Virus record (IMG/VR): IMGVR_UViG_3300030329_006583
Span: 203,119 to 267,118 of that record
Length of the DNA stretch: 64,000 bases
Direction: 5' to 3' (one strand)
The position numbers and the translations under genes are program-made. The notes below the pieces were generated by a model. That model had not been told where the DNA came from, did no database searches, and worked only from the letters and a program-made list of their open reading frames with translations. Each line of letters begins with the position of its first letter. Positions within the stretch are counted from its first letter, which is position 1. Shown one piece after another: positions 1-64,000 of the stretch.

Positions 1-436
1 TTTTGCCTGACTCAGCACCGGTACGCATACCCAATGATTCATCCTCTTTATCATCATATCCCTGGTGGCCTTCTTCCATATCGTCCTCTGCCAGGTTTTC
101 TTCAACCAATTGGCGAATTCGTTGGCGTAAAGCGGCCTGCTTATTTAATTTCGCTTTTTCTTCTTTTACTATTTGGCGCAGCTGCCTCCTACCCAAGGCT
201 CGGCCTCGGCGGCGACGAGACTCATGTTTTTCTCTTTCATGTTCCAGCTCTTCTTCGTGAGCGCGCTCCATCTCTTCCCGATCATCCTTAATGTCTTTCT
301 CAAGATTATCAATATGATCCTTGTCATCATCAATGTTTTTACGAAGATTATCCAGCTCATCACTGATGCTATCCTCGGCAAGGCGCCGAACTTCTTCCTT
401 TACGATTTTTCTCAATTGTCTCTTTGTGATTCTCAT
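1..436 (-). CDS. Tagged acidic/coiled-coil protein, 3'-truncated by the window edge (MRITKRQLRKIVKEE...)
   Basis: Hand-translated from ATG at 436, open to base 1; three tag-like helices (RQLRKIVKEE, RQLRQIVKEE, LRQRIRQLVEE); not in the ORF track. Confidence 0.8.
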   Translation of the reverse strand, partial: MRITKRQLRKIVKEEVRRLAEDSISDELDNLRKNIDDDKDHIDNLEKDIKDDREEMERAHEEELEHEREKHESRRRRGRALGRRQLRQIVKEEKAKLNKQAALRQRIRQLVEENLAEDDMEEGHQGYDDKEDESLGMRTGAESGK

Positions 437-726
437 CCTCTCATTCTCCTTGCCATTCCCAGCTGTTGTCCCACATTTTGCGCATCAACAGTATCCCCTT
501 GATCCAAATCCTGTTGGCGCTGTTGTGTTAATTTCTTAACTTGATCCGCCGAGGCTTGTTCCTCGTCGACATCATCTCCACTTAATGAAGTATCCATTCC
601 CATGTCACCCACGGCAAGAAAACCTTCATCATCATCACTTTTCTCCTGGGGGGCTGTATAACCCACAACCTGTTCCCGCAGAATCTCCCTTATTACATTT
701 CGCAATCTGTACTCTGTAACTCTCAT
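433..726 (-). CDS. Small tagged hypothetical protein
   Basis: N-term MRVTEYRLRNVIREILRE; ATGA overlaps with neighbours. Confidence 0.75.
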   Translation of the reverse strand: MRVTEYRLRNVIREILREQVVGYTAPQEKSDDDEGFLAVGDMGMDTSLSGDDVDEEQASADQVKKLTQQRQQDLDQGDTVDAQNVGQQLGMARRMRG

Positions 727-13686: not shown

Positions 13687-14721
13687 TTATACACTTTGTT
13701 GATACAACCGTAAAGCCTCAATTTGACGTTCATTTAAATTTTGAGGAATAACAATTTCCACCTTTGTTAAGTGATCGCCTCGCCTTCCTTTGTGATCCTC
13801 TATCCCTTTACCTTTCATTCTCAAAATGGAATTAGGTTGAGTGCCGGCCGGAACATTAATATCCGTCAGGCCATGTACTGTCTTCACCTTAGTCATTCCC
13901 CCTAGGGTTGCAGTAACCATATCTACATGTAATACATTAAGCACATTAAGACCATCCCTACCATAATACGGTGATTGTTGAATTCTGACGTATACGTTCA
14001 AATCACCAGGTGGCATTACGGATTGGGTGCTTTCGCCTTTTCCTTTAATTTGAACCACATCACCATCATCAATCCCCTTCGGAATTTGAATCTCAATGCC
14101 TTCCTTATTTACAACCTTCCCTTTACCGGTACAACTTTGGCACTTTTCTTTTATTGTTTTCCCATGCCCGCCACAAGATGGACATGTGGTAGTAACACTA
14201 AAAAACCCTTGCTGCCCAATCACCTGCCCTCGGCCTCCGCATGTAATGCATGTTTGCGGCAATGTACCAGGTTTACAGCCGGAACCAGAACAAGTAACAC
14301 AATTAACATAACGTTCAAGTTCTAGAGTGCGTACACAACCTTTAACCGCCTCATCAAAAGACAACGGAATTTCTACGTCAATATTGCGATTGCGCTGGAC
14401 GCGATGAGTTTGTCTTCCAAAGAAATCACCGAAAATACTACCAAATTGATCAAAGATATCCCCAAATCCCGCAGAGGTGGCCCCAAATCCATCAAAATTA
14501 AACGCATCATGTCCACCAGCGTCATATTGTGCACGTTTCTCCGGATCACTTAATACCGCATATGCTTCACTAATTTCCTTAAACTTTTCTTCTGCCTTAA
14601 TATTATCTGGGTTTTTATCTGGATGATATGTAACGGCAAGTTTACGATAAGCTTTTTTGATTTCTGCCCCGGTGGCATTTTCACTTACCCCTAACAAGGT
14701 GTAATAATCTTTTTTTGACAT
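13687..14721 (-). CDS. dnaJ: Class A DnaJ chaperone
   Basis: J domain with HPD, G/F region, four CxxCxGxG repeats. Confidence 0.95.
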
Positions 14722-14724: not shown

Positions 14725-16194
14725 TTATTCCGATCTTCTCTTAAACTCTTTCATTAATTTTTCCGCCTGCTCCTCATATTCTGCGAGATTTGCCCAAGAT
14801 TTATCAGGGGAAAGCATACTTTCATCAATTCCATTAAATTTTACCGGAATTTTCAAACCTGTATAAGGATGAAGTTGATAATCTGCTTTTTTTAATGTTC
14901 CATCATGAATACCGGCTATTATCTTTCGAGTTACATCGATGGGCATACGATGGCCTATCCCATACCCGCCACCGGTCCACCCTGTATTAACAAGCCAACA
15001 ATCTACTTTATGCTTCTCAATTTTTCCCTTTAATAAGTGTGCATATTCCTGAGGAAACCGGGGCATAAATGGTGCGCCGTAACAATAGGAAAAAGTTGCC
15101 TCCGGTTCTTTCACCCCTGCCTCGGTGCCAGCCACCTTGGCCGTATACCCCAGAAGAAAGTGTTGTACAGCTTCCTCGGGAGTAAGCTTGGAAACCGGGG
15201 GTAGAATCCCAAAGGCATCACATGTTAACATTACAACATTGGCTGGATGTCCAGCGGCACCAGTTTTACTGGAATTACTAATATATTCAATTGGGTAAGA
15301 TGCACGTGTGTTCTCTGTGAGTGTTGCATCATTAAAATCTGGGGTTCTATCATCATGAAGGATAACGTTCTCTAGAATGGCACCGTGCCTTTGGCAGGCA
15401 TTCCAGATTTGTGGTTCAGCTTTCGCGTCAAGCCGAATCACCTTGGCATAACAACCGCCTTCAAAATTATAAAGACCTGTGTCCGACCAAGAGTGTTCAT
15501 CATCCCCAATCAATACCCGATCTTCCTCCGACGAAAGTGTTGTCTTACCTGTCCCAGACAGTCCAAAAAATATTGCCGGAGCCCCTCCATCCTCTGCGGT
15601 GTTCACAGAACAATGCATGGGCAGAATTCCTTTTGCCGGCAGAAGAAAATTCAGAACAGTGAATACGCTTTTCTTAATTTCCCCGGCATAATAAGTACCG
15701 CTAATCAATATTTCTTGTTCTTGAAATGAAATGAGAACCATAGGATCTGAGGTAAAGGTCGGTGCGGCATAAATCGTCCATTCATCTTCTTGCCCTGTTA
15801 ACATGTGTTCAATCAATTCGGGCCTAACAAACATATTCCTTGCAAATATACTGTGCCACAATAATGTTGTATTGACTTTAAGCCTCAAAGTGTTTGCAGG
15901 ATCACGATTGGCGTAAAGCGTTTGTGTATATATTCCGGTTTCCCCCGCTTTTGCAAGGTGCTCTTTCATCCTATCACGGGTATACAGAAATTCGTGATGG
16001 GTAATACTTTGATTGGCATCCCAATTAATTTTTCCTTGCGTAATGGAATCACACACAATAGATTTTGCCTTAGGTGAACGACCCGTGCAATCGCCGGTAG
16101 CGGTGACCAAGGCACCACCCCCAGATTCATTAGCTTCCCCCAATTGGAGGGACATCCGTGTTAATTCTTTTAATGAAAATTCATCTAATAACAT
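14725..16194 (-). CDS. pckA: ATP-dependent PEP carboxykinase
   Basis: TGRSPK, YAGEIKK, MHCS, FFGLSGTGKTTLS, IGDDEH, NFEGGCYAK. Confidence 0.95.
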   Translation of the reverse strand: MLLDEFSLKELTRMSLQLGEANESGGGALVTATGDCTGRSPKAKSIVCDSITQGKINWDANQSITHHEFLYTRDRMKEHLAKAGETGIYTQTLYANRDPANTLRLKVNTTLLWHSIFARNMFVRPELIEHMLTGQEDEWTIYAAPTFTSDPMVLISFQEQEILISGTYYAGEIKKSVFTVLNFLLPAKGILPMHCSVNTAEDGGAPAIFFGLSGTGKTTLSSEEDRVLIGDDEHSWSDTGLYNFEGGCYAKVIRLDAKAEPQIWNACQRHGAILENVILHDDRTPDFNDATLTENTRASYPIEYISNSSKTGAAGHPANVVMLTCDAFGILPPVSKLTPEEAVQHFLLGYTAKVAGTEAGVKEPEATFSYCYGAPFMPRFPQEYAHLLKGKIEKHKVDCWLVNTGWTGGGYGIGHRMPIDVTRKIIAGIHDGTLKKADYQLHPYTGLKIPVKFNGIDESMLSPDKSWANLAEYEEQAEKLMKEFKRRSE

Positions 16195-16205: not shown

Positions 16206-17129
16206 TTAAGCGGCGGCAATTAAGTGTTTAAAATCTTCAAGGTATTTAAACAACGCCTGTTCTTTGGCTTTACATTCTAACACCACATCCAAATCTAACC
16301 CCAAATCTTGAAAAGGTTCATAATAATATGTAGAATGTGTACATGCAGGAACTTTGGGATCCTCGTATTTTTTCTTGGAATTAGAATGATGACATGTAGG
16401 TGTCACATCCCCCCAAGTTGAAGCCGCCATATGAAGAGCCTCAGAATAAGACTGATCTTGTGGACCTAATTGAAAGTGGTGTGAATCAAATACAATAGGA
16501 ATGCCGACTCGGCGGTATACGCCATCATATAATTGTTTAGTAGAAAACATGTTTCGTTTGTCATCATTCTCAACGGTTAACCTCCTTTGAGTTGTGGGTT
16601 GTAGCAATTCAAAATTTTTGCAAAAGCGAGCCAAAGCAGAGGCACGATCTCCATAGGCACCACCAACATGAATGTTAATCTTGGAATTATGATCAGCAGG
16701 CATGCCTAACATGTCCATAATAATAGCATGATTGTCTAATTCCCTAAGGGCATTATCTACCACGTGTTTTTTAGGGCTGGCGAGGACACAAAATTGACCG
16801 GGGTGAAAAGACAATCGCTGACCACTATGATGAGCCATGCGGCCGGTGGATGCCAACACTTTACGGATCTCCGATATATCCGGTAAATCATCGAAGCGAT
16901 ATTCTGACATCCACGGAAAGAGGCACGAACTAATGCGAAATACGCCTACGTTGTGTTCATTATTCCATTCCACAATTCGCTGAAGTGATTTTACATTGCT
17001 TAATGCAATTTCACTAGCGTAAGGCAAACCCTTGGCCAACCATGTCCTTTTAATCATTCCGCGGTTGGCGCTAATCTTTTCTTTTTTTTGTAGGGTCATA
17101 TTAATACAGGCATATCCGAATCGGGTCAT
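16206..17129 (-). CDS. uvsE: UV damage endonuclease
   Basis: GYACIN, FRISS, SFHPGQF, VENDD, VFDSHH, ECKAKEQA. Confidence 0.93.
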   Translation of the reverse strand: MTRFGYACINMTLQKKEKISANRGMIKRTWLAKGLPYASEIALSNVKSLQRIVEWNNEHNVGVFRISSCLFPWMSEYRFDDLPDISEIRKVLASTGRMAHHSGQRLSFHPGQFCVLASPKKHVVDNALRELDNHAIIMDMLGMPADHNSKINIHVGGAYGDRASALARFCKNFELLQPTTQRRLTVENDDKRNMFSTKQLYDGVYRRVGIPIVFDSHHFQLGPQDQSYSEALHMAASTWGDVTPTCHHSNSKKKYEDPKVPACTHSTYYYEPFQDLGLDLDVVLECKAKEQALFKYLEDFKHLIAAA

Positions 17130-30305: not shown

Positions 30306-30313
30306 TGACTCTC

Positions 30314-31897: not shown

Positions 31898-31908
31898 GGA
31901 ATAACGAA

Positions 31909-39069: not shown

Positions 39070-39087
39070 TTGCTTCTCCTATTAATA

Positions 39088-39534: not shown

Positions 39535-39910
39535 TATTTTTCTTTATAGCATCAGCAGTTTGTGCATATTCCTTATCCAGCTCAGTAATGTCATCCACCT
39601 CGTGTGTATAAACTTCAATAATTACATCGGGATAATTAATGGTTATTTTTGCATGATGATTAAACTCTTCCTGGAAATCTAGGATATCACCAACAAATAA
39701 AGCCAATTCGCGCTGTGAATCGAAAACATATGTTTTCATTAAACGCCTGGGTGATTCTACTACACGCCAAGTAGCCTTATGTGGAATAACAGGCGATTTG
39801 TGATCCATATTTTTTAACTGGGGTAAAAGATCCACTAAACATGAATCATCGGAACCTTTTTCTTCCACGTCAAAATATTCACACATTAATTTTCGCAAAT
39901 TGGATTCCAT
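39485..39910 (-). CDS. Pterin-4a-carbinolamine dehydratase-like protein
   Basis: W..VESPRRLMKTYVF, NHHAKI, VYTH...ITELD. Confidence 0.8.
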   Translation of the reverse strand: MESNLRKLMCEYFDVEEKGSDDSCLVDLLPQLKNMDHKSPVIPHKATWRVVESPRRLMKTYVFDSQRELALFVGDILDFQEEFNHHAKITINYPDVIIEVYTHEVDDITELDKEYAQTADAIKKNIVTEQNFEFEGHYTEY

Positions 39911-49254: not shown

Positions 49255-49264
49255 AATTTTCCCC

Positions 49265-51580: not shown

Positions 51581-52107
51581 TTTTTACCTTTTAAAAATGC
51601 TGTAATTTCATCAATCTCTTGTTCTAAATCTTCACTATCAACATTCAAATAATAAATGTCGCATTGTGTCCATTTACCAAATTCAAAATAAAGCTTTGAT
51701 AATTTATTTAAATTTTCCTCTGTTAATAAATCGGGGCGATCTTCATCATATAAACCAGAATAATCAGATCTGAAACATACAATGATTTTGGTACCCAATG
51801 ATGCAAAATGTCGATCAGAATTTCTCACCGCTGATAAATCTGTTTCTCGATGAAAAAATTGAGAATATACCCACTCACAAGGATAGGCACGATCCAATAT
51901 CAAAGAATAGCCGGTTTGGCTTAGTAAATCCAACATACGTGGATCTGCATATCTCATTTCATTAATAAAGTTTTTTTCATTTCTAAATTTTGATTTTTCA
52001 TCACAAGCCTTAAAGGTTGGAATACCTAATCGGGAGGATAATTCATGCGCAATTTCTGTTTTTCCTGTTTTATCCGGACCACAAAAAATTATAAGTTGCT
52101 GTTCCAT
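51577..52107 (-). CDS. dNMP kinase (thymidylate-kinase-like)
   Basis: GPDKTGKT, ILDR. Confidence 0.8.
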   Translation of the reverse strand: MEQQLIIFCGPDKTGKTEIAHELSSRLGIPTFKACDEKSKFRNEKNFINEMRYADPRMLDLLSQTGYSLILDRAYPCEWVYSQFFHRETDLSAVRNSDRHFASLGTKIIVCFRSDYSGLYDEDRPDLLTEENLNKLSKLYFEFGKWTQCDIYYLNVDSEDLEQEIDEITAFLKGKK

Positions 52108-52155: not shown

Positions 52156-55100
52156 TTAAGTTAACAGTTGTTTAAATTTACCAAAATTAGTAGACATTCC
52201 AAATTCATTTTGATTGATCTCAGCAACACAAATTGAATAAGCCGGAACATCTGTTTTGCCATCCCAACCCCACATAAACATTTTTGAAACTTTCCCTGAT
52301 GATCCTGTAATCTCAAGCAAAAGATAGGGTCGTTTGTTTTTTGTCAATTTAGAATGTGCAGCCTTTACAACAAACCAATATAAATCTTTGCCGTGATATT
52401 CATCAATTGCTGCAATTTCTTTTTCAGCAAATTTTTGTTTAATTTGTTCCGGAATTAAAAGACTGGCGTCAAAACTACCAAGCAAAGAAGTACTCATCTC
52501 AGCCCTTTCCTTGGCACCCCATTCATCACACCTTTCTTCTTCCAGTATGGCCTGACGATAATTGTTAATCCCACGTTCAGGATCACTTTTTGTTCGCTTT
52601 CTTAAATCATTATAGTGATCAATCAAAACATGATGCATATGCTTATAACTGGAAAATTCTTTGTTATCTCCTACCACATCCATGGATTCAAAAGCGCCAA
52701 TTTTAATTAAATTTTCCAATGCGCGTTTATTAAATTTTGAATGCCTCCAAATTCCTTCTTCATCCCACAACATTTCCCTTATGTTTCGATAAGGTCTTTT
52801 TTCAACAATTTCATCAATTGCAGAAGATCCCACGCCTTTACAAGAAAGAAATGAAGGCATAAACTTCTTGCCGTCAAGGATAGTCCAACTATCTGTGGCA
52901 TAATTAACGTCAATAGGGATAATATCATATCCCAACGCCCTAACCTCTGAAAATGCTTTGGCACGCTTATCAGCATTTGATGACATGGATTCCAGGTATG
53001 CACAAAGCCATTCCTCTTCATAATACGTCATCAGCCATGCACAAAAATATGAATCCATTGCATAAGAAACAGCGTGACTCATATTAAAACCATACCCGGC
53101 AAAATAAAGAATCTTTTCGTAAAGATCACTAGCAACTGAATTTGGTACCCCGTTTTTAACGGCGCCTTCAACAAAACTGCTTTTTAATTCATTAGCCTTT
53201 TTAATTGCCGCTGCACCACCGGAGATGCTGCGTTTCATGATAGCCTTTCTGACTTTATCGCATTCATCCTTGGGAAAACCTGCGACTACATTAGCTAATT
53301 TCATTACCTGTTCTTGAAAAATAATCATCCCATACGTAGGCTCTAAAACCTCCTTAATCAACGGATGTTGGTAATCAATATTCTCAGGTTCCAGCTTGTT
53401 TTTAATGTATAATTTATGAACATTGGCCGCCAGAGGCCCTGGGCGATAAATAGAGGTAAGAGTAGCAATATCAATTAAATTACGAGGCTTTGCCTTCATA
53501 AATAGTCGCTGGGCACCCCTATTTGTTAATTGAAAGATTCCGCCCCACCTACCGGAATGATATACATACTCATACACCTGTGGGTCATCAAAATCTATCA
53601 CACTTGGTGCCATGTTTTCTTCGTACCATTTTCTTACATCTGCAAATGCCGGTTTATCTACACCGCAGTGCCTCTGCAAAATCAATTCAATGGCACGTTC
53701 TACAATGCGAAGTGTTTCCAAACCCAGGAGATCAAATTTAATCCAACCAAATTCTTCCAGGTGTTTAAAATTTGTACCTTCCACCCACGGCGTTTGGGTT
53801 TCACCTTTGGCCAAAATAAGAGGCATTCTTTGGGGAACATTCTCTGAAACAATAACCCCGCCTGCATGACGACCTAGCGCCTTGTTTTGCTTAAACAATA
53901 CTCCCATGGGATTAGCCACTTCCGGGTATTTATCAATGAATTTTTTAAATGATTCACTGTGTTTAATTGCATCTTCGTATTTTAACACAAAAAGATTCTT
54001 GTCTTCACCGTGTTTGGTAACAGCTTTACGAACATCCTGTTCCACCGTCCGGGTGGCTGCATTGGCTTCATCAAAAGGAATCCCATAAAATCTCGATATA
54101 TCTTTCACCAACGTCTTTAATTTAAATGTGTTATAATTGGAAATTGGAACAATGTTCTCACCCCCAAAATTATCTTTAAGCAAATCAATAAGCAAATCCC
54201 GATTGGAAATATCTGTGTCAATATCAGGATATTCTAAACGATACTTGCTCAAAAAACGTTCAAAAAGAAGGTTGTATTTAATAGGATCGACGTCGGTGAT
54301 ATAAAGAACATAATTAACCAGTGAACCCGCACCGGAACCGCGGCCTGGACCGATTAACATCCGATCTCGAGCAACATCCAAAATTGCTTTCATCGTTAAA
54401 AAGTAGGCACTAAATTTGCGTTCTTTAATAACCGCCAGTTCCATTTTTAACCGATCGATATATTCTGGCTCATCAGCTAACCCACGTTTTATGAGTCCCT
54501 CTTTACACGCCTCCAATAATGCTTTATCGGCAGTCAAACCCTCGGGAATAACATAAGAAGGCAATTTAGGACTTTGATCGGGGTGAATGTCCCCAATTTC
54601 TTCATACACAATATCATGAGTACGTTCAATTGCCCCATGAATTATGTTATCATCATAAAAATCATACTGTTTAGTTGTGTCTTGATAGGATTCCCAAACC
54701 TGATTGGCGTTTTTGGGATAAAGTTCACACTTTAAATCCTCTTTGGACTGAGGGAGTTTGGAAGGATCAAAATCACGATAATTAAGCCAGCCCAATTTTT
54801 TATAAAGTTCCCGCTCCTTCCAATGTTCAGGACGGGCATAATGAGAATCTGTGGTTACAACGAGCTGTTCCTGCAAACCGGCATTGTCTGCAAATTTCAT
54901 AATGGCCCTATTGACCAGGTGCTGTGCCGGTAATTGGTTGAATTGAAGCTCTAGTTTAACATTCCCACGACCCACTGAATGTTCCAGTTGTTCATAAGCA
55001 TTCCCTACCCCCAATAATACCTTTTCAAACAAATTCTTATCATCCAACAAACTGGCATGTAAATTATCAAATTCTACTTCCTGTAGGTGTTTAAAAACCT

Positions 55101-55758
55101 CATAACATAAGGGACCGCCCAAACATGCGGTAGAGATCATCAGGTGACCTCCCTTCGCCGCTTCTTTTAGCATCTTATAATCAACTCGAGGAAACCGATA
55201 AAACCCCTCCATGTACCCACGAGACACCAGGTGAAACAAGCGTTGAAGACCTTCCGACGTTTTTGGAAGCACCACCAGGTGGTGGCGGCGCTTAATTGGA
55301 TCATAAAACTTACCTGATTTAGTTTCCTCCTCGTTTTCAATTGTTAGGCTAGCTGCATCTGTAGAAATATCAAGGGTTTCATCATCACCATCTAATTTAG
55401 CAGTGAGGGGGGTAACTAATTTTTCCCGTTGGGCACGCAATACAGCTAGTGCATCAGTGTCACCTTTCTTTGCCGCTTTTTGAATTTCGTAATCAAGCTT
55501 CCATGCCTCAAGATCCGGATGAACATACATTTCACAACCAGGTACAAACTTAAAATTAGCACCGGCTTTATTCAATTTTTCCGCATGCAAATAAGCATGT
55601 GCAAAACTATTCATATGGCCATGGTTCGTCAAACACCACGCATCCATTCCATTTCCCCTCACAAAATCAATGTGTTCCTGAGGGTAATCCAACCCATCAA
55701 AAGTGGAAAATCCATCATGGGCATGCAGGCTTACAAAACGATTCGGTTCTCTACTCAT
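52156..55758 (-). CDS. dnaE: DNA polymerase III alpha subunit (family C)
   Basis: PHP HAHDGFS/TNHG/DSHY; GPGRGSGAGSLV; PDIDTD; KFDLLGL; YGFNMSHA. Confidence 0.95.
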   Translation of the reverse strand: MSREPNRFVSLHAHDGFSTFDGLDYPQEHIDFVRGNGMDAWCLTNHGHMNSFAHAYLHAEKLNKAGANFKFVPGCEMYVHPDLEAWKLDYEIQKAAKKGDTDALAVLRAQREKLVTPLTAKLDGDDETLDISTDAASLTIENEEETKSGKFYDPIKRRHHLVVLPKTSEGLQRLFHLVSRGYMEGFYRFPRVDYKMLKEAAKGGHLMISTACLGGPLCYEVFKHLQEVEFDNLHASLLDDKNLFEKVLLGVGNAYEQLEHSVGRGNVKLELQFNQLPAQHLVNRAIMKFADNAGLQEQLVVTTDSHYARPEHWKERELYKKLGWLNYRDFDPSKLPQSKEDLKCELYPKNANQVWESYQDTTKQYDFYDDNIIHGAIERTHDIVYEEIGDIHPDQSPKLPSYVIPEGLTADKALLEACKEGLIKRGLADEPEYIDRLKMELAVIKERKFSAYFLTMKAILDVARDRMLIGPGRGSGAGSLVNYVLYITDVDPIKYNLLFERFLSKYRLEYPDIDTDISNRDLLIDLLKDNFGGENIVPISNYNTFKLKTLVKDISRFYGIPFDEANAATRTVEQDVRKAVTKHGEDKNLFVLKYEDAIKHSESFKKFIDKYPEVANPMGVLFKQNKALGRHAGGVIVSENVPQRMPLILAKGETQTPWVEGTNFKHLEEFGWIKFDLLGLETLRIVERAIELILQRHCGVDKPAFADVRKWYEENMAPSVIDFDDPQVYEYVYHSGRWGGIFQLTNRGAQRLFMKAKPRNLIDIATLTSIYRPGPLAANVHKLYIKNKLEPENIDYQHPLIKEVLEPTYGMIIFQEQVMKLANVVAGFPKDECDKVRKAIMKRSISGGAAAIKKANELKSSFVEGAVKNGVPNSVASDLYEKILYFAGYGFNMSHAVSYAMDSYFCAWLMTYYEEEWLCAYLESMSSNADKRAKAFSEVRALGYDIIPIDVNYATDSWTILDGKKFMPSFLSCKGVGSSAIDEIVEKRPYRNIREMLWDEEGIWRHSKFNKRALENLIKIGAFESMDVVGDNKEFSSYKHMHHVLIDHYNDLRKRTKSDPERGINNYRQAILEEERCDEWGAKERAEMSTSLLGSFDASLLIPEQIKQKFAEKEIAAIDEYHGKDLYWFVVKAAHSKLTKNKRPYLLLEITGSSGKVSKMFMWGWDGKTDVPAYSICVAEINQNEFGMSTNFGKFKQLLT

Positions 55759-57690: not shown

Positions 57691-58123
57691 GACCAGCCTC
57701 CATCAACCAATTATGGTAATCATTTAAAGCATGATCAGTAGGTTGTACATGTTCCCAATCACCTTTGCAAAATATTCGCCATGCATCATCGGCATACTTG
57801 CCACACCCATAAAGATCGGAGGCTGTCTCCCAATCGCCTGTTAAAAAACCTTTTGAGAATTTTTTCAAAGTATTAATCCGACGATTGTACATACCTAAAG
57901 GCTTAAGAATTTCTCGCAATCCCAATTCATCAGCATCTAAAATTGCTTGTGCATTTGGGTATTTTTTAAAAAACTCATCAATCATAGGATCTACTTGTTT
58001 ACGTGAAGTTTGATTCAACAATAAACAACATACCAGGATCTTCCACTGATCAGGCCAGTAATCCTCTTGTAATAATGCATGCGGTGATCTCGGTGGTTGC
58101 CAGTGCATCACTACCTCCTTCAC
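57683..58123 (-). CDS. MBD4-like HhH mismatch DNA glycosylase
   Basis: LLQE...WKILVCCLLLNQT, LKPLG, LYGCGKYADDAWRIF, DHALNDYHNWL. Confidence 0.8.
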   Translation of the reverse strand: MKEVVMHWQPPRSPHALLQEDYWPDQWKILVCCLLLNQTSRKQVDPMIDEFFKKYPNAQAILDADELGLREILKPLGMYNRRINTLKKFSKGFLTGDWETASDLYGCGKYADDAWRIFCKGDWEHVQPTDHALNDYHNWLMEAGRA

Positions 58124-58154
58124 AATAATAAAAAGAATAAAAATGGTGTATAAA

Positions 58155-58979
58155 TTATCGGTCCTGAATTCCTACAATTTTAACCGGGGTGGCAATATAT
58201 TCATTCCACAAGCTGGTCCTTACGCTTCCATCGCAACTATCCAGTTCATAACATATATTGTTGAGATCTTTACCGGGATATTCTAGCCGATACATATTGC
58301 ATGCACGCCGACCATTATCTAGTGCCATTGATTTAATGTCACTGCGAAAACCTGCACGGACATTACCGATAAATGTCACTAACACCGTGGATTCAGGACG
58401 AAAAAATTCTCGTTCCATAACTGTAAAAGCAGAAATATCAAATTCAGGACCTGATTCCAGGGATTTCATTAATCTATCCAATCCTTCAGGGGAAGTATAG
58501 TGGGATAGGAACTTAAGGTTATACGTGGAACCGTAAAGCTGTGTTGTATATACATCATCAAGCATCACATAAGGTTCCATATCTCCGCGTGAATAAAAAA
58601 ATGCAAATCTTAATTCTCTAATATCTGGGAAATAGTGGCCGTATTCATTTTCAAATGCCCACAACCTATGATTCACAAAATCTTCAATGAAATCCAAAAC
58701 ATTCTTTTTTGTTAATAATTCCCACCTATCGACTTCATCGCTAAGTTGGTATCCAAAAAACTGAGATATAAGACCTAGAAAATTCTCAAAATCTTCTGCA
58801 CTGCAGGAAACAGGATGTTTACAACTTAATTTTCCACCCCGGGAATCAAAGCCTAATCCTTGAAGTTCCAGGAGATACAGCGCCATTTCTTCCCATTCAC
58901 CCAATGTATGAAAAGACGAAGCTGGTTTCATGTATCCCCTAACTTTTGTTGATTCTTTCATAGTACCAATAACTATCAT
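58155..58979 (-). CDS. Hypothetical protein
   Basis: 274-aa ORF. Confidence 0.7.
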   Translation of the reverse strand: MIVIGTMKESTKVRGYMKPASSFHTLGEWEEMALYLLELQGLGFDSRGGKLSCKHPVSCSAEDFENFLGLISQFFGYQLSDEVDRWELLTKKNVLDFIEDFVNHRLWAFENEYGHYFPDIRELRFAFFYSRGDMEPYVMLDDVYTTQLYGSTYNLKFLSHYTSPEGLDRLMKSLESGPEFDISAFTVMEREFFRPESTVLVTFIGNVRAGFRSDIKSMALDNGRRACNMYRLEYPGKDLNNICYELDSCDGSVRTSLWNEYIATPVKIVGIQDR

Positions 58980-59710
58980 TCATCAGTTAAAGATGACCTA
59001 AGTTCCCTATATGCACCTACCGTAATGGGGAATAAATTTTCCGCAATACCCAACACGGCAATTGCCACCTGTTGAATTTCCCACTGCGCGCCTTCATGAA
59101 TGCGAAGATCAACGAATTTAAGAATATTGTTCAGGTTTGCCGTCCCGTAGTATTCGGTATACATATTTTGTGGAAGGACACCGCGGGCTTGTTCACGACA
59201 AACACCGGACTCCAAAAGTCGATCCAGGAGTTTAAGTGAGTTAACATGGTGTTTTCGAACTAATTCACTAGCCTCCGTTTCAACCAAACTCGCCATCAAC
59301 GGATGATCGATCTTGATGCTGGGATTAATCAATTTGTTAACAGATGCCTGCCTGTTGGATTCGCTCTGTTTCCTAAAAGCTTTAGGCTCATAGAATTCTA
59401 TGTTAAAATCTGTGTACCTTCTGCTAATTTCATTATAGGACCATGTCCTATGGCGCATATGCTGTTTGGAAATAAACAGAGGCACCTTAAAACGAAAAGT
59501 AATAGAACAATGTTCTAAAGTGCTGGTATGTTTGTGTTTAATAAGGTAATTGATCAATCTTTTGTCTTTTTCGTCAATATCTTCTTTATGTTTACCAAAA
59601 GAAACACGAGCGCTATTGACCACGGAAAGATCGCTACCAAGGTGATCAACCAATTCCACAAATCCGATTCCATCATCGTATAATTCTGTCCGTTCTTTGG
59701 GAAGTGTCAT
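58976..59710 (-). CDS. thyX: Flavin-dependent thymidylate synthase
   Basis: SARVSF, HTSTLEH, RHRTWSYNEISRRY, AQWEI. Confidence 0.95.
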   Translation of the reverse strand: MTLPKERTELYDDGIGFVELVDHLGSDLSVVNSARVSFGKHKEDIDEKDKRLINYLIKHKHTSTLEHCSITFRFKVPLFISKQHMRHRTWSYNEISRRYTDFNIEFYEPKAFRKQSESNRQASVNKLINPSIKIDHPLMASLVETEASELVRKHHVNSLKLLDRLLESGVCREQARGVLPQNMYTEYYGTANLNNILKFVDLRIHEGAQWEIQQVAIAVLGIAENLFPITVGAYRELRSSLTDE

Positions 59711-59711
59711 T

Positions 59712-60602
59712 TTAACATCCTATTATAAATACATCGCTAAGATCTAAAGCATTATCGCCAATTTTACCATGAGGCCAAGATTTTCTATCTAACACCTCTA
59801 AATAAAGGTGACAAGGTATTTTTTTCTTAAATCTGTTGCGAAAAGTTTCCTTAATTTTTATATAAGGTTTATCCCATTTTCTCACCAAGATGTGCTGATC
59901 AATGATTGTCTTCCCTAAACATCCTTTCCATGCTAAATCAAACCAACTCCCATAACTAGCATCTGACCAAACCACTAGTTCGGGTTTTAATTTGCATATA
60001 TCCCCGGCACGACTTGCACTGGTGAGTGCAGAACCGCCGGCAGAATGGCCAACAAAAATCCAACGAATTTTTTCTATTTTTTTATTATGAACCTGAATAG
60101 ACCATTTTTCCAATCGTGCATGCACCGCATTTATATAATGTTGAAGAGAACCTGGTTTTTTCCACACCTGTTTTTGACGACCCCTGGGGGTTTGTGTATT
60201 AACTGACCAAGGCATTTCCGGAATTGCAATTGCAAAAGACCCGTTTTCTGACGCGGCTTTATTTAATTGGGGGATTATTCTTTTTTGAAACGTTTTATCA
60301 CTAAAACCCCCCAAACCATGAAACCAAACGATTACTGTAATATCTTCCGGTATTGATTCATTAGAAACCAATAAAACTGAATCCCTCCACCCATTACGAT
60401 GCTTAAAATCACGAGCGTCTTCAGAGGGATTTTGAAATAGCCATGTAGTAAAAGAAAACTCGGCTGACGGTAGTGCATTCAACCAACGCGTGACTGTTTG
60501 CGAATAAACGTTAGGTTCAATGAACACATCATCCGCAAATGTTTGAAGTGGCATAAACACAACCAGCACACATATGAGCCACTTAATCATTACGATAAAC
60601 AC
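59712..60602 (-). CDS. Secreted alpha/beta-hydrolase-fold protein
   Basis: Signal peptide; WFHG; GHSAGG. Confidence 0.65.
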   Translation of the reverse strand: MFIVMIKWLICVLVVFMPLQTFADDVFIEPNVYSQTVTRWLNALPSAEFSFTTWLFQNPSEDARDFKHRNGWRDSVLLVSNESIPEDITVIVWFHGLGGFSDKTFQKRIIPQLNKAASENGSFAIAIPEMPWSVNTQTPRGRQKQVWKKPGSLQHYINAVHARLEKWSIQVHNKKIEKIRWIFVGHSAGGSALTSASRAGDICKLKPELVVWSDASYGSWFDLAWKGCLGKTIIDQHILVRKWDKPYIKIKETFRNRFKKKIPCHLYLEVLDRKSWPHGKIGDNALDLSDVFIIGC

Positions 60603-61222
60603 ATTCCCAAATCGTCTTCTGTAATGAGGGTATAAGTAAATTTATTTCCATATACATCAGCAGAAAAATGACATGTTTCCATGAATTCATAGAAATCTTT
60701 GCTACTCTGAAAAACTTGGCATCCGGCGCTTACCCCACCGGTGTATTCTCTTTCGTCGGATCCCCAATGTCGATGAATGTTGATGCCATACATTCCTTCA
60801 TGAATCTTACCGGTATAATCGGGTTTACGATCACGGTTATCATCCCGCCAAATCTTCACCTTGCCCAAACGTTGACATAATGCCGTGTACTTTCTTTTGC
60901 CACCATGGGTATCTATCTTGTATACACCGCGATATTGGTTTGGTACCAAAATGGCTGTACCACCTTTCACAATGGGCCGGCGAAGGATGCGAGTCCCAGG
61001 CTCGGTGGTAATAATATAACTATCCACCACCCATTCCCCACTCACCCGATAAATAACGTTCATGAAATCATCAAATTTATCAGCATTACCTGAATGATTG
61101 CGAATACCAATAATATTGATATTGTAATCACCGTTCTCAAAAAACGCATACCCCTTTTTGTTCAAGGTATCCTTAAATTGACCAGCAATATTTCTTGCCT
61201 GTAAACCTGTAAAACGTGCCAT
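60590..61222 (-). CDS. YkuD/L,D-transpeptidase-like protein, possible endolysin
   Basis: GINIHR...SAGCQV. Confidence 0.6.
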   Translation of the reverse strand: MARFTGLQARNIAGQFKDTLNKKGYAFFENGDYNINIIGIRNHSGNADKFDDFMNVIYRVSGEWVVDSYIITTEPGTRILRRPIVKGGTAILVPNQYRGVYKIDTHGGKRKYTALCQRLGKVKIWRDDNRDRKPDYTGKIHEGMYGINIHRHWGSDEREYTGGVSAGCQVFQSSKDFYEFMETCHFSADVYGNKFTYTLITEDDLGMCLS

Positions 61223-61231
61223 TACATTCCT

Positions 61232-62476
61232 TTAAAATTGTTCCGCTTCCGTAGAATCTTCCAATGCCAATGTAGAACTCTCACCGGAAGATATCACCTG
61301 AGAAACTGCATCAAAATAACCGGTTCCAACCTCTCGTTGATGGCGATGTGCCGTGTACCCCAATTCCTCCGCAGCGAATTCAGCGTCCTGCAAATCAGCA
61401 TACGCAGACATATCCCTATCATTATAATCGAGTGCAAGCTGAAACATGTGATGATTAAGATTATGAAAACCGGCCAGCGTAATAAATTGAAATTTATAAC
61501 CCATTTTTCCCAATTCACTTTGAAACTTAGCGATTGTTTTGTTATCTAGATTTTTCCTCCAGTTGAAACTCGGGGAACAGTTATAGGCCAATAATTTACC
61601 TGGGAATTTTTTATGAATTGCATCAGCAAACCTCTGGGCTTCTTCCAGATCGGGGGTACTAGTTTCACACCATAAAAGATCTGCATAAGGTGCATATTGC
61701 AGCCCCCTAGAAATTGCCATGTCAATCCCACCGGTAATTCTATGAAAACCCTCAGGTGTTCGTTTAGAATCTGTGATAAATTCCTTATCTGTTTCATCAA
61801 TATCTGATGTTAATAATTTGGCACTATTGGCATCGGTTCTTGCAATTATAACGGTGTCTGTACCCATCACATCACTAGCTAGGCGTGCCGCAATAAGCTT
61901 TTTTACAAACTCAGATGCCGGTACCAAAACCTTTCCCCCTAAATGCCCGCATTTTTTGGCGGAAGAAAGTTGATCTTCAAAGTGTACACCGGCGGCACCA
62001 GCGCGGATCATTGATTTCATTAATTCAAACACATTTAATGAACCCCCAAATCCTGCCTCTGCATCTGCAACAATTGGGGCATACCAATCACGTGATGCCG
62101 TCCCTTTGTTTTCATTCCACTCAATCTGATCAGCCCGACGAAGAGAATTATTAATTTTTTGCACCAACATTGGAACGCTGTGTACTGCATACAGGCTTTG
62201 ATCGGGATACATTTCATGAGAATCATTTGCATCGGCAGCCACCTGCCAACCCGAACAATAGATGGCAGGGGTACCGGCTTTTACCATTTGCATCGCCTGA
62301 TTACCGGTGACTGCACCCATCGCATGCACATAATCCATTTCATTCATTAGCCGTCGCAACGTCGCCGCCGTTCTTTTAGCCAATGTGTGTTCCTCTGCAA
62401 GTGAACCCCTCAGGAGTTCAACATCACGTTCAGTGTAAGGTCTTTTAATATCATCAGTCAATTTACAGTTCCTCAT
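61232..62476 (-). CDS. aceA: Isocitrate lyase
   Basis: [47 protein letters not shown]. Confidence 0.97.
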
Positions 62477-63992
62477 AAAGTCTTGTTGTCAAGAAATCTT
62501 CCATTTTATCCTGAAAACAAAAGGACGATAGCAATTCCACTTCCTCTGGTTCCATATCGCTTAATAGTTCATCAATTATATCTTGAACTAGTTTTTTAGA
62601 AACAACTGTCCCATTAGATAATGTAACGTTGTATGTTAACCATTGCCAAATTTGTGCCCGTGATATCTCAGCCGTAGCTGCATCTTCCATTAGGTTGTTA
62701 ATGGGAACACAACCATTGCCTTCCAGCCAGGCGTTAAGATATTCAAACATTACTGCCAAATTTTTCTTCAATCCGCTCAAAGTGCATGTACCCTTTGGCA
62801 GGCACAACAAATCACGACCACCAATTGATGCATTGGTAATATGAGGGATATCAATTTGATTAGCATCCGGCATGTGTTCATCAAATATCTCTTTCGCAAG
62901 AGGTATCAACCCGGGATGGGCTACCCACGTACCATCATGACCACTCAAAACCTCGCGCAATTTATCGTTTTTAACCTTTTCCATGGCTTTGTGATTTGCC
63001 TGAGGTGCATTTTTAATGGGAATCTGTGCCGCCATCCCTCCCATTGCATGCACTCGACGACGATGGCATGTTTGAATCAACAATTGCGAATAACAACTCA
63101 TAAAATGTTGATTCATTCCCACCTGATCCCGATCAGGCATTATCATCTTAGGATTATTCCGAAATGTTTTAATAAAACTAAAAATATAATCCCATCTCCC
63201 ACAGTTCAGCCCAGCAGTATGGTTTCTGAGCTCATATATAATTTCATTCATTTGAAATACAGCGGGAAGTGTTTCAATTAAACATGTTACCTTTGTGGTT
63301 CCCACCTCGATACCTACGTATTCTTCAGAATATGTAATAATCTCGTTCCACAAACGAGCCTCTAAATAATGTTCCATTTTCGGAAGATAAAAATAAGGTG
63401 CGCTTGATCTATTTGCAAGTTCTTGTGCGTTATGAAAGAAATAAAGACCAAAATCAAACAACATGGCTGGAATGGGTTTTTTATTATATGTTACATTATT
63501 TTCTTTTAGGTGAAAACCCCGCGGGCGAACAAATAATATAGCTGGGTTCTCCCCTAGCTTGTAAAATTTACCTGTTTTGGGATTGGTATATGTAATTGTA
63601 CGCCTAACTGCATCATACAAATTCCTTTGACCATTCACACAATTCTTCCACGTTGGAGAATTAGAATCTTCAAAATCAGCCATAAATACATTGGCCCCAG
63701 AATTAAGGGCATTAATAATCATTTTTCTATCAACAGGTCCTGTGATTTCAACCCTGCGATCCTGAAGCTCTTGAGGAATAGGATCTGCAACCCAATCCCC
63801 TTCACGAACATCCAACGTAGTAGAAACAAAATCAGGCATATCACCTAAATCATATTTTCTTTGTGCCGTTTCTCTTTTCTTCAGTGCTGCCTCTATGCGA
63901 GGACCAAATTTCTCCACTAAGGATGATAAAAATTCCAATGCATCATATGAGAATATTAACGTATCACTTTTTACATCTTTTACTTCTAGCAA
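62463..63992 (-). CDS. aceB: Malate synthase A (start may lie just beyond the window)
   Basis: [46 protein letters not shown]. Confidence 0.95.
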
Positions 63993-64000
63993 TTTTATAC

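What the first reader, a model, noticed from the sequence alone, without database searches (positions are those of the whole stretch)
61232..63992. Complete glyoxylate shunt (aceB-aceA) plus pckA in a phage-like genome
Seen: intact malate synthase and isocitrate lyase with catalytic motifs, overlapping as an operon and flanked by phage-type genes; ATP-PEPCK lies at 14725..16194. Established: together these convert acetyl-CoA to PEP for gluconeogenesis. Inference: redirects host lipid/acetate carbon to ribose and NDP-sugars for dNTPs and DNA glycosylation, an unusually complete auxiliary pathway.
Basis: partly seen in the sequence, partly recalled or inferred. Interest (0 to 1): 0.68.

Follow-up and report, generated by a model that had tools for sequence, protein, structure and literature searches.

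The report
Phage-borne glyoxylate shunt plus PEPCK
A closed, roughly 267-kb marine jumbo phage genome carries intact malate synthase, isocitrate lyase and PEP carboxykinase genes, but phage aceB-aceA operons have been described before, so this is a well-documented new example and not a new kind of thing.

Summary
Window 62463..63992(-) encodes malate synthase A and 61232..62461/62476(-) encodes isocitrate lyase. Both score above NCBIfam equivalog cut-offs and keep their catalytic motifs. ATP-PEPCK lies at 14725..16194(-). The contig is viral and not chimeric. It carries a T4-type capsid gene, portal, terminase, sheath and baseplate genes. Its ends overlap by 98 bp, giving a 267,018-bp unit, and an independent k127 assembly is exactly 267,018+127 bp. 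Beyond the window end lie ClpP, RNR and DnaB. That same order, DnaB-ClpP-aceB-aceA (with an RNR match between DnaB and ClpP where one was scored), recurs in 15 other IMG/VR contigs. Thirty viral contigs carry both genes. Composition matches the phage (|z|<1), and dN/dS within phage lineages is about 0.07. The phage has no malate dehydrogenase, citrate synthase, aconitase or GlpX, so host enzymes must close the route. The fate of the carbon is inferred only. Phage aceBA operons were already reported (Nishimura 2017; Hurwitz 2013; a 2025 huge-phage preprint). The modest new point is the link to pck: two large aceBA phage genomes also carry pckA, and one further contig has aceB-aceA-pck contiguous.

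The parts
62463..63992 (-). aceB, malate synthase A (509 aa). TTG start at 63992. Its Shine-Dalgarno sequence (AAGAGG) overlaps the stop codon of the upstream ClpP gene, which lies across the contig junction.
   Evidence: Pfam MS_N/MS_TIM-barrel/MS_C. TIGR01344 710.3 bits against a cut-off of 594.5. PDB 3cux and 3cuz. Motifs. Junction sequence.
61232..62461 (-). aceA, isocitrate lyase (409 aa from the TTG at 62461 with SD GAGGA). The alternative ATG at 62476 gives 414 aa and a 14-nt overlap with aceB.
   Evidence: Pfam ICL 327 bits. NF011645 716.5 bits against a cut-off of 562. PDB 6lrp 603 bits, with the KKCGH loop. Start-site reading.
14725..16194 (-). pckA, ATP-dependent PEP carboxykinase (489 aa, a compact form), flanked by UvdE (16206..17129) and DnaJ (13687..14721).
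   Evidence: PEPCK_ATP 592 bits. NF006820 639.8 bits against a cut-off of 636. P-loop, IGDDEH and YAGEIKK motifs. The same UvdE-pckA-DnaJ order appears in independent Tara assemblies.
63903..64000 (.). Terminal overlap. The last 98 bases of the contig equal contig bases 3..100. The assembly therefore closes on itself (267,018-bp unit), and aceB's upstream neighbours are at the contig start.
   Evidence: A k127 contig of 267,145 bp = 267,018+127. Logan contigs run 8.3 kb and 155.7 kb past the window end. The ClpP-aceB junction is conserved in 15 relatives.
60590..61222 (-). Gene directly downstream of aceA (210 aa, 9-nt spacer). Phage family phrog_3000, function unknown.
59712..60602 (-). Unknown 296-aa protein. 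It is conserved downstream of aceBA in five related viral loci.
58976..59710 (-). ThyX, flavin-dependent thymidylate synthase. It is part of the nucleotide-metabolism neighbourhood in which aceBA sits.
   Evidence: Pfam Thy1 170 bits. ThyX lies downstream of aceBA in the two relative contigs where a syntenic match was scored (L018; L063/L064).
52156..55758 (-). DnaE-type DNA polymerase III alpha (1200 aa), the phage replicase 5.5 kb downstream of aceA.
   Evidence: phrog_405 741 bits. At most 30% identity to cultured phage DnaE proteins.

Best explanation
These are genuine phage auxiliary metabolic genes that have long resided in phage genomes. The window is the last 64 kb of a closed 267,018-bp genome of a marine (Tara Oceans) myovirus-type jumbo phage. 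In that genome ClpP, aceB, aceA and the following genes are packed 1 to 11 nt apart on one strand, inside the replication and nucleotide-metabolism block (DnaB, RNR, ThyX, DnaE). The proposed mechanism is inferred from the known chemistry of the families. During infection, phage isocitrate lyase diverts host isocitrate away from the two CO2-releasing TCA steps and produces succinate and glyoxylate. Phage malate synthase A condenses glyoxylate with a second acetyl-CoA to give malate. Host malate dehydrogenase or quinone oxidoreductase, which the phage does not encode, makes oxaloacetate. Phage ATP-PEPCK converts that to PEP. Host gluconeogenesis and the pentose-phosphate pathway then supply sugar phosphates for nucleotides and for the phage's own NDP-sugar enzymes. 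The net effect is a carbon-conserving, C2-fuelled infected cell in a nutrient-poor ocean host. What is shown: gene identity, intactness, viral residence, conservation and purifying selection. What is inferred: expression during infection, the direction of flux and the fate of the carbon.
For: Identity and intactness.

Viral genome: gp23-family capsid gene at 215 bits; portal, TerL and two tail-sheath genes; baseplate wedge; S77 prohead protease, gp32 and T4 baseplate; 309 of 339 called ORFs on one strand; no integrase.

Closure and continuity: a 98-bp end overlap; an independent 267,145-bp k127 contig, and five contigs over 0.2 Mb that carry the identical PckA; Logan contigs of two runs cross the window end with 0 differences, and a third, independent study tiles 58001..63483 at 100% identity.

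Not foreign DNA: GC, GC3, synonymous codon use and tetranucleotide composition of aceA, aceB and pckA all lie within 1 sd of the genome's genes.

Conservation: 54 IMG/VR contigs carry ICL and/or MS. Thirty carry both, 29 of them as adjacent aceB-then-aceA, and 15 have the same DnaB...ClpP upstream order.

Selection: dN/dS median is 0.065 for ICL (21 pairs) and 0.067 for MS (5 pairs).

Phylogeny: the window's ICL sits in an all-viral clade of 9 (support 100). All 29 viral MS sequences fall on one side of a branch (SH-aLRT 86).

Link to PEPCK: a 201.6-kb aceBA phage contig also carries pckA (54% identity). Another viral contig has aceB, aceA, a divergent 612-aa PEPCK_ATP and DnaK contiguous.

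A sink for sugars: phosphomannomutase, GDP-mannose dehydratase, UDP-glucose dehydrogenase, epimerases, aminotransferase and glycosyltransferases are in the same genome.
Against: There is no expression evidence. No listed RNA run held the sequence. The pathway is not self-contained: no Ldh/Mdh-family enzyme, citrate synthase, aconitase or GlpX was found. pckA is 46 kb from aceBA in this genome. pckA and aceBA also occur independently: a 284-kb phage rated complete by CheckV has pckA but no aceBA, and a 95%-complete 172-kb phage has ICL alone. The three genes are therefore not an obligate unit. The host is unknown, so it cannot be said whether the phage adds a pathway or boosts an existing one. 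The gluconeogenic fate of the carbon cannot be told apart from a redox or stress-relief role using sequence alone.
Confidence: 0.6

Rival explanations
1. The enzymes are functional, but their benefit is redox, stress or iron economy and not gluconeogenesis. The bypass lowers NADH and ROS production and the demand on iron-rich respiratory complexes, which keeps a stressed, nutrient- or iron-limited host alive long enough to finish the infection. On this view PEPCK is an independent anaplerotic or cataplerotic valve.
For: The genome is rich in genes that protect the cell against stress. These include Fe/Mn superoxide dismutase, Fpg, UvdE, an HhH-GPD glycosylase, DnaK, DnaJ, a GroEL-like protein, Hsp20, FKBP, ClpP, the PrkA/DUF444/SpoVR starvation module and PhoH. 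aceBA and pckA are unlinked in this genome and occur separately in other phages. Hurwitz et al. proposed an energy or starvation role for virome aceAB (PMC4053976).
Against: A contiguous aceB-aceA-pck cluster exists in another viral contig. pckA co-occurs with aceBA in both of the phage contigs over 200 kb that carry aceBA. Both facts fit a C2-to-PEP route better. The genome's many NDP-sugar enzymes need hexose phosphates.
Confidence: 0.22
2. Lysogenic or pseudolysogenic host-fitness genes. This is the reading Nishimura et al. gave for their 179-kb aceBA virus: aceBA would be expressed from a resident phage to help the host grow on C2 compounds.
For: It was proposed for the first complete aceBA viral genome, which also carried LPS and capsule genes, as this genome does (PMC5332604).
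Against: There is no tyrosine integrase (positive control 14 of 14). The gene set is that of a large T4-like virulent phage with its own replisome, RNR, sigma factor and tRNAs. aceBA sits among replication genes, 1 to 11 nt from its neighbours and on the same strand, which is not a moron-like arrangement.
Confidence: 0.06
3. The enzymes handle other substrates. Malate synthase would assimilate or detoxify glyoxylate derived from the glycolate that is abundant in seawater, and/or the ICL would act as a methylisocitrate lyase in propionate detoxification. Neither would run a true glyoxylate cycle.
For: ICL-only phages are more common than phages with both genes: 21 of the 54 contigs here, including a 95%-complete genome, and 98 ICL against 22 MS in the preprint. 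The two enzymes can therefore be useful separately. From outside knowledge, not tested here: some ICLs (M. tuberculosis Icl1) also cleave methylisocitrate.
Against: The protein scores as an isocitrate lyase equivalog (716.5 bits) and far below the methylisocitrate lyase cut-offs (108 against 354). Strict aceB-then-aceA adjacency in 29 of 30 contigs that carry both argues that the two act together.
Confidence: 0.08
4. Artefact: a host fragment mis-joined to a phage contig, or a cellular contig mislabelled as viral.
For: IMG/VR labels the record 'linear', and CheckV estimates only 78% completeness. At least one other IMG/VR record class, the 'provirus' records L026 and L027, has an ICL that nests inside Oxalobacteraceae and is probably host DNA.
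Against: The circle is closed. Three or more independent assemblies, from at least two studies, run through the region and past the contig end. Composition is that of the phage. The junctions on both sides recur in many other viral contigs. Hallmark virion genes lie on the same molecule.
Confidence: 0.02

Closest known systems
aceBA operon of the complete marine viral genome TARA_ERS478052_N000008 (179 kb; Nishimura et al. 2017, mSphere, PMC5332604)
   Same: It is also a Tara Oceans genome: a large phage with T4-like structural genes, adjacent aceB and aceA, many LPS, capsule and NDP-sugar genes, and an unknown host.
   Different: This genome is 267 kb, not 179 kb. It also carries pckA, which that paper's aceBA section (the only part read here) does not mention. 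No zeta-toxin or other lysogeny hint was looked for beyond the integrase search, which was negative. I could not compare the two sequences directly because that genome was not retrievable here.
Isocitrate lyase and malate synthase genes of huge phages (Huge Phage Genome Collection preprint, 10.1101/2025.02.27.640493)
   Same: ICL is much commoner than MS (98 against 22). The two genes are adjacent in 20 genomes. MS carriers come from marine, soil and plant-related habitats. The counts in IMG/VR here show the same pattern.
   Different: In the passages read, that work reports the genes from structure clustering. It gives no synteny, selection, phylogeny or PEPCK link. Whether this particular genome is in that collection is unknown.
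aceAB reads in Pacific Ocean viromes (Hurwitz, Hallam and Sullivan 2013, Genome Biol, PMC4053976)
   Same: Same gene pair and same marine viral setting. Several related IMG/VR contigs found here share a narrow block of IMG dataset numbers (33000251xx). I suspect these are marine virome datasets but could not check.
   Different: Those were unassembled gene families with no genome context. Here the genes sit on a closed genome.
Enterobacterial aceBAK operon
   Same: Same aceB-then-aceA order, both genes on one strand with translational coupling. The enzymes are orthologous: 61.7% (ICL) and 48.5% (MS) identity to Salmonella.
   Different: No aceK follows aceA. The next ORFs have no Pfam family. 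No IclR-type regulator appeared in the family scans. The operon is embedded between a ClpP-like gene and phage genes. Both genes use TTG starts.
TCA, glyoxylate and gluconeogenesis genes of giant eukaryotic viruses (Mimiviridae; reviewed in eLife 2022, PMC9270025)
   Same: Viral ICL, MS and PEPCK have all been reported there, with transcripts in ocean metatranscriptomes. The concept of viruses rewiring host central carbon metabolism is the same.
   Different: Those are Nucleocytoviricota, which infect protists. This is a tailed bacteriophage with bacterial-type ribosome-binding sites, DnaE polymerase and a tmRNA. The acquisitions were presumably independent; this was not tested.
Phage C48C1 (OQ984149, filed under Kyanoviridae, 156 kb)
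   Same: In the INPHARED collection it is the only complete, named phage genome (not a contaminated record or fragment) with a full-length ICL: 56% identity, annotated 'hypothetical protein'.
   Different: It has ICL alone, with no MS hit. Its ICL belongs to a separate, deeper all-viral clade of 11 members.

Membership tests
Isocitrate lyase (EC 4.1.3.1; NCBIfam NF011645 / TIGR01346; Pfam PF00463) | Whole-protein score above the curated equivalog cut-off | tested here: met
   NF011645 716.5 bits against 562. TIGR01346 537.1 against 275.9. Methylisocitrate lyase models score far below their cut-offs.
Isocitrate lyase (EC 4.1.3.1; NCBIfam NF011645 / TIGR01346; Pfam PF00463) | Catalytic loop K-K-C-G-H with the active-site cysteine, plus the acidic metal-binding motifs | tested here: met
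   KKCGH at 174-178, DAEAGFGG at 138-145 and FEDQ at 166-169 all align with solved ICLs. The roles of the residues come from outside knowledge.
Isocitrate lyase (EC 4.1.3.1; NCBIfam NF011645 / TIGR01346; Pfam PF00463) | Cleaves isocitrate to succinate and glyoxylate | not testable with these tools
   An enzyme assay is needed.
Malate synthase A (EC 2.3.3.9; TIGR01344) | Whole-protein score above the equivalog cut-off, with the A-type and not the G-type architecture | tested here: met
   TIGR01344 710.3 bits against 594.5. The malate synthase G model scores 35.6 against 565. MS_N, TIM-barrel and MS_C domains are present.
Malate synthase A (EC 2.3.3.9; TIGR01344) | Catalytic Asp and Arg, and the Mg-binding Glu and Asp | tested here: met
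   [11 protein letters not shown] at 435-445, RPRGFHL at 156-162, LIETL at 238-242 and NCGRWDY at 263-269 are conserved against 3cux and 3cuz. Which residue plays which role is recalled from the literature, not tested here.
ATP-dependent PEP carboxykinase (EC 4.1.1.49; Pfam PF01293; NCBIfam PRK09344 models, TIGR00224) | Score above curated cut-offs | tested here: inconclusive
   Pfam scores 592 bits against 26.5. The subfamily models NF006820 (639.8 against 636) and NF006821 (414 against 369) pass. The equivalog models TIGR00224 (534.6 against 590) and NF006822 (642 against 806) do not. This is a compact 489-aa form with many unnamed marine relatives.
ATP-dependent PEP carboxykinase (EC 4.1.1.49; Pfam PF01293; NCBIfam PRK09344 models, TIGR00224) | Kinase-1a P-loop, kinase-2 metal site and the PEPCK-specific motif | tested here: met
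   GLSGTGKTT at 211-219, IGDDEH at 229-234 and YAGEIKK at 169-175.
Phage auxiliary metabolic gene (aceBA operon of marine phages) | Encoded on a molecule that also carries virion hallmark genes, without an assembly break | tested here: met
   gp23 capsid gene, portal, TerL, sheath and baseplate on the same closed contig. Continuity is shown.
Phage auxiliary metabolic gene (aceBA operon of marine phages) | Conserved in related viral genomes under purifying selection, with phage-like composition | tested here: met
   30 viral contigs carry both genes, 15 of them with identical upstream synteny. dN/dS is about 0.07. Composition is within 1 sd of the genome.
Phage auxiliary metabolic gene (aceBA operon of marine phages) | Expressed during infection and alters host metabolism | not testable with these tools
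   No RNA run held the sequence. The host is unknown.
Enterobacterial-type aceBAK operon | aceK (isocitrate dehydrogenase kinase/phosphatase) following aceA | tested here: not met
   The ORFs downstream of aceA (60590..61222 and 59712..60602) have no Pfam or NCBIfam family. The first matches only the unknown phage family phrog_3000.
   Ldh_1_N, Citrate_synt, Aconitase and FBPase_glpX are absent from the whole 267-kb genome, while the control genomes ring. None appears in the Pfam scans of 144 further ORFs. Malate:quinone oxidoreductase was not searched for specifically.

The most novel reading that the evidence does not exclude
Marine jumbo phages repeatedly assemble a three-enzyme 'C2-to-PEP' module, with PEPCKs of at least two different types recruited next to or alongside aceB and aceA. 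The three genes are contiguous in one viral contig and co-resident in two genomes over 200 kb. If so, these phages turn their hosts into gluconeogenic, acetate- or lipid-burning infected cells that feed phage nucleotide and NDP-sugar synthesis. The module would be a selected functional unit, not three independent auxiliary genes.
Probability: 0.3. Interest if true: 0.55.

Novelty: new member of a known kind. Interest (0 to 1): 0.35.

Why it matters
The finding gives a closed, well-contextualised reference genome for phage-encoded glyoxylate-shunt genes. It shows that the gene pair is an old, conserved and selected module sitting in the replication and nucleotide block of a whole lineage of marine jumbo phages. 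It also adds a testable link to PEPCK. If the enzymes are expressed, infection by such phages would change how much carbon from C2 compounds and lipids is respired and how much is retained. That matters for models of carbon flow through infected cells in the ocean. It is not a new concept: viral aceBA has been known since 2013 and 2017.

Tried and rejected
(1) Sigma-70 promoter and intrinsic-terminator scans around aceBA and across the junction found no more sites than shuffled sequence. With spacers of 1 to 11 nt there is no room for dedicated signals, so the transcription unit could not be delimited.

(2) A single-sequence pattern scan of IMG/VR for pckA found nothing. A two-sequence alignment was needed, and it found 7 contigs.

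(3) Donor inference failed. The closest cellular ICLs are all about 67-73% identical and spread over Bacillota, Myxococcota, Gemmatimonadota and Burkholderiales. The backbone of the ICL tree is unresolved. The cellular sample was chosen by similarity to the query, so it is biased. The nearest named PEPCKs are Methylobacterium at about 51% identity, which is too distant to name a donor.

(4) The host was not identified.

(5) No expression evidence was obtained. The one RNA run from a sample that holds the phage had none of its words.

(6) dN/dS for the window's own genes against their nearest relatives could not be computed because synonymous sites are saturated (pS 0.77-0.90). Closer pairs within the viral clades were used instead.

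(7) IMG/VR's 'linear' label and CheckV's 78% completeness estimate were considered and rejected as evidence that the genome is incomplete.

(8) The large exhaustive protein search, structure prediction and complex prediction were not used. Sequence similarity to solved enzymes already settles identity.
Full report
OBSERVATION. Almost every sizeable ORF in the window is on the minus strand. The ORF at 62463..63992(-) encodes a 509-aa protein with the three malate synthase domains: MS_N, a TIM barrel at 358 bits, and MS_C. The ORF at 61232..62476(-) encodes an isocitrate lyase (Pfam ICL, 327 bits). NCBIfam places both above curated equivalog cut-offs: isocitrate lyase NF011645 at 716.5 against 562, and malate synthase A TIGR01344 at 710.3 against 594.5. 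The G-type synthase and methylisocitrate lyase models score far below theirs. Both proteins align end to end with solved enzymes: ICL 6lrp at 603 bits, MSA 3cux at 580 and 3cuz at 527. The motifs are in place. ICL has KKCGH at 174-178 and [10 protein letters not shown] has [19 protein letters not shown] and [11 protein letters not shown]. The ORF at 14725..16194(-) is an ATP-type PEPCK (592 bits) with the P-loop GLSGTGKTT, IGDDEH and YAGEIKK. It passes two NCBIfam subfamily models but falls below the TIGR00224 equivalog cut-off. It is a compact 489-aa form.

The 14-nt overlap between aceB and aceA exists only if aceA starts at the ATG at 62476. The TTG at 62461 has a GAGGA Shine-Dalgarno sequence 8 nt upstream and is the start used in the database's 409-aa gene call. 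It lies 1 nt after the aceB stop codon. Either way the two genes are translationally coupled.

IS THE CONTIG VIRAL, WHOLE AND CONTINUOUS? The window is the last 64 kb of a 267,118-bp IMG/VR record. IMG/VR labels the record 'linear' and CheckV rates it 78% complete. However, contig bases 3..100 are identical to the last 98 bases; only the first two bases differ. The assembly therefore closes on itself with a unit of 267,018 bp. An independent ENA assembly of a Tara Oceans run (k127) carries the identical PckA on a contig of 267,145 bp. That length is exactly 267,018+127, the signature of a circular path in a k-mer graph. Five contigs longer than 0.2 Mb carry this protein. Logan contigs of two runs cover window 58001..64000 with no differences and run on for 8.3 kb and 155.7 kb past the window end. 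A third run, from a different study, tiles 58001..63483 at 100% identity.

The same molecule carries a full set of virion and replication genes:
- a gp23-family major capsid gene at 215 bits;
- portal, large terminase and two tail-sheath paralogues;
- baseplate wedge;
- S77 prohead protease, gp32, T4 baseplate protein and RecA;
- RNR, DnaB and SbcC;
- a DnaE-type polymerase;
- a tmRNA and seven tRNAs.

Of 339 called ORFs, 309 are on one strand. No tyrosine integrase was found. This is a large myovirus-type phage from marine metagenomes.

WHAT FLANKS THE GENES. Across the junction, the gene immediately upstream of aceB is a ClpP-like protease (contig 104..706). Its stop codon lies 11 nt before the aceB TTG and overlaps aceB's AAGAGG ribosome-binding site. 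Further upstream come the RNR large subunit and DnaB. Downstream of aceA, after 9 nt, lie in order:
- a phrog_3000 protein of unknown function;
- an unknown 296-aa protein;
- ThyX;
- an HhH-GPD glycosylase;
- the DnaE polymerase.

aceBA therefore sits inside the replication and nucleotide-metabolism block.

RELATIVES. Pattern scans of IMG/VR found 41 viral loci with ICL (58-87% identity) and 29 with MS (52-61%). I ran all genes of this genome against those loci. The loci represent 54 distinct contigs: 51 with ICL, 33 with MS and 30 with both. In 29 of the 30, aceB is followed directly by aceA. In 15 the upstream order DnaB...ClpP-aceB-aceA is the same as here. That recurrence independently confirms the junction inferred from the end overlap. 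At least four other genomic contexts also occur, so the pair has moved between phage backbones.

ICL without MS is common. It occurs in 21 contigs, including a 172-kb genome rated 95% complete. Phage C48C1, the only complete, named phage genome in INPHARED with a full-length ICL, also lacks MS.

COMPOSITION, SELECTION AND PHYLOGENY. For aceA, aceB and pckA, the GC content, GC3 and synonymous codon usage all lie within 1 sd of the genome's 142 genes of 200 aa or more. The tetranucleotide profiles of the 3-kb windows that hold them are closer to the genome average than the typical window. Within viral lineages where synonymous sites are not saturated, dN/dS is 0.025-0.10 for ICL (median 0.065, 21 pairs) and 0.04-0.11 for MS (median 0.067, 5 pairs).

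In a maximum-likelihood tree of 43 viral and 80 cellular ICLs, the window's protein lies in an all-viral clade of nine (support 100). Other viral clades have 13, 11 and 4 members. The backbone is unresolved. One 'provirus' record nests inside Oxalobacteraceae and is probably host DNA. In the MS tree all 29 viral sequences fall on one side of a branch (SH-aLRT 86), on longer branches than in the ICL tree. The nearest named cellular ICLs are only 67-73% identical and are spread over several phyla. No donor can be named. The genes are old residents of phage genomes, not a recent capture from a host.

THE PEPCK LINK. I tested twenty aceBA- or ICL-bearing viral records for pckA. The 201.6-kb record IMGVR_UViG_3300020477_000013 has a 54%-identical copy about 18 kb from its aceBA. 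In IMGVR_UViG_3300009128_001408 the order is amidase, aceB, aceA, a divergent 612-aa PEPCK_ATP (160 bits), DnaK, all contiguous. Conversely, an alignment-based scan found pckA in only seven viral contigs. Five of these were tested and lack aceBA, among them a 284-kb genome that CheckV rates complete. The association is suggestive but not obligatory. The PckA here belongs to a set of unnamed, compact (about 480-490 aa) marine metagenomic proteins at 53-77% identity.

HOW COMPLETE IS THE PATHWAY? Whole-genome searches found no Ldh/Mdh-family protein, citrate synthase, aconitase or GlpX-type FBPase, while the control genomes rang. Pfam scans of 144 further ORFs revealed no other central-carbon enzyme. 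The phage therefore supplies the two bypass-specific enzymes and the exit step to PEP. The host must supply isocitrate, the oxidation of malate and the rest of gluconeogenesis.

The genome does hold many consumers of sugar phosphates: phosphomannomutase, GDP-mannose dehydratase, UDP-glucose dehydrogenase, UDP-galactopyranose mutase, several epimerases, a DegT aminotransferase, a carbamoyltransferase and glycosyltransferases. It also holds a stress and starvation set: superoxide dismutase, Fpg, UvdE, DnaK, DnaJ, a GroEL-like protein, Hsp20, PrkA/DUF444/SpoVR, PhoH and glutamine synthetase.

MOST LIKELY MECHANISM. The steps below follow from the established chemistry of the enzyme families and are inferred, not shown.
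1. Phage ICL diverts isocitrate from the decarboxylating TCA steps.
2. Phage MS adds a second acetyl-CoA to glyoxylate.
3. Host malate oxidation gives oxaloacetate.
4. Phage PEPCK gives PEP for gluconeogenesis and pentose phosphates.

This conserves C2-derived carbon for phage nucleotides and sugars. What is shown is that the genes are intact, phage-resident, conserved and under purifying selection. The main rival reading is that the bypass chiefly lowers NADH and ROS output and iron demand in a stressed host. Sequence alone cannot exclude it. A lysogenic-conversion role, proposed for the first aceBA virus, is unlikely here: there is no integrase, and the genes are embedded among replication genes. 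The chimera or cellular reading is effectively refuted.

COMPARISON WITH WHAT IS KNOWN.
- aceA and aceB were detected in Pacific Ocean viromes in 2013 (PMC4053976).
- An aceBA operon in a complete 179-kb Tara viral genome with T4-like structural genes and LPS/capsule genes was described in 2017 (PMC5332604).
- A 2025 preprint counts 98 ICL and 22 MS genes in huge phages, adjacent in 20 genomes.
- pckA appears in lists of viral auxiliary genes (PMC12448302).
- Giant eukaryotic viruses carry ICL, MS and PEPCK (PMC9270025).

This locus is therefore a new member of a known kind. In the papers I could search I did not find any description of the co-residence of pck with aceBA, or of the contiguous aceB-aceA-pck cluster. 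That absence rests on a limited library.

VERDICT. Interest is moderate to low (0.35). The most novel reading still open is a selected three-enzyme C2-to-PEP module in marine jumbo phages, with probability about 0.3.

Noticed in passing
window 63903-64000 and G000 contig 1-100: IMG/VR labels the record 'linear' and CheckV rates it 78% complete. However, the ends overlap by 98 bp (only the first 2 bases differ), and an independent k127 contig is exactly 267,018+127 bp. The genome is closed at 267,018 bp, so the database label understates it.
   Followed up: yes
L078:7039-14448 (IMGVR_UViG_3300009128_001408): Another viral contig carries amidase, aceB, aceA, a divergent 612-aa PEPCK_ATP (160 bits) and DnaK, all contiguous. 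A different PEPCK type has been recruited directly beside aceBA.
   Followed up: partly
window 49265-50257 (-), with 51577-52107 and 58976-59710: The ThyA-like protein's best solved relative is a MilA-type CMP 5-hydroxymethylase (164 bits, against 97 for a true thymidylate synthase). It scores below every NCBIfam TS cut-off. A ThyX and a thymidylate-kinase-like gene lie nearby. This suggests hydroxymethyl-pyrimidine (hypermodified) DNA.
   Followed up: partly
L004:721-4116 (G000 contig 721-4116, minus strand): The RNR large subunit is 1131 aa and has an HNH-endonuclease-like stretch at residues 394-481. This is probably an intein or a homing-endonuclease insertion. The best RNR match among relatives aligns over only about 530 aa.
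   Followed up: no
L010:4006-4405 (G000 contig about 124006-124405, minus strand): The phage encodes a tmRNA with tag peptide ANTDTYNDYALAA, plus seven tRNAs (Arg-CCT, Asn, Thr, Gln, His, Leu-TAA and others). These are possible clues to the host.
   Followed up: no
G000 contig 127777-132212 (L010:7777-12212): PrkA (660 aa) and SpoVR (434 aa) were located exactly. An adjacent ORF is presumed to be the DUF444 protein found in the Pfam scan. This is the bacterial yeaG/yeaH/ycgB-type starvation module, carried on a phage. Glutamine synthetase, PhoH, Hsp20, FKBP and SOD are also present.
   Followed up: partly
window 52156-55758 (-) and G000 contig 38553-40505: The replicase is a DnaE-type Pol III alpha with at most 30% identity to any cultured phage's DnaE. 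The capsid, prohead protease, gp32 and baseplate genes are T4-like. This is an unusual pairing of replication and structural modules.
   Followed up: no
window 13687-14721, 22912-24807, 27696-29306; L004:104-706: There is a full chaperone and protease set: DnaJ, DnaK (801 bits), a GroEL/thermosome-like Cpn60 (206 bits) and a ClpP-like protein. The ClpP-like gene sits directly upstream of aceB and is conserved there in 15 related contigs.
   Followed up: partly
L005:5939-12546 (G000 contig 25939-32546): Two adjacent tail-sheath paralogues of about 1,095 aa each, roughly twice the usual sheath length.
   Followed up: no
L026 and L027 (IMGVR_UViG_3300031417_000403 and 3300031420_000496, class 'provirus'): Their ICL nests inside the Oxalobacteraceae (Massilia) clade and has no MS beside it. 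It is probably host chromosome included in the provirus call, not a phage gene.
   Followed up: partly
G000 contig about 80-120 kb (members of alignment A1) and window 48244-49314: A very large NDP-sugar and polysaccharide gene set: Polysacc_synt_2, GDP-mannose dehydratase, DegT aminotransferase, UDP-galactopyranose mutase, UDP-glucose dehydrogenase, carbamoyltransferase, formyltransferase and several glycosyltransferases. This resembles the LPS/capsule genes noted in the 2017 aceBA virus.
   Followed up: no
ICL and MS trees: Between the same pairs of phage genomes, MS is much more diverged than ICL. Against L018, for example, identity is 61% for MS and 87% for ICL. dN/dS is nevertheless equally low in close pairs. 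MS appears intrinsically less constrained, or it may have been exchanged separately.
   Followed up: partly
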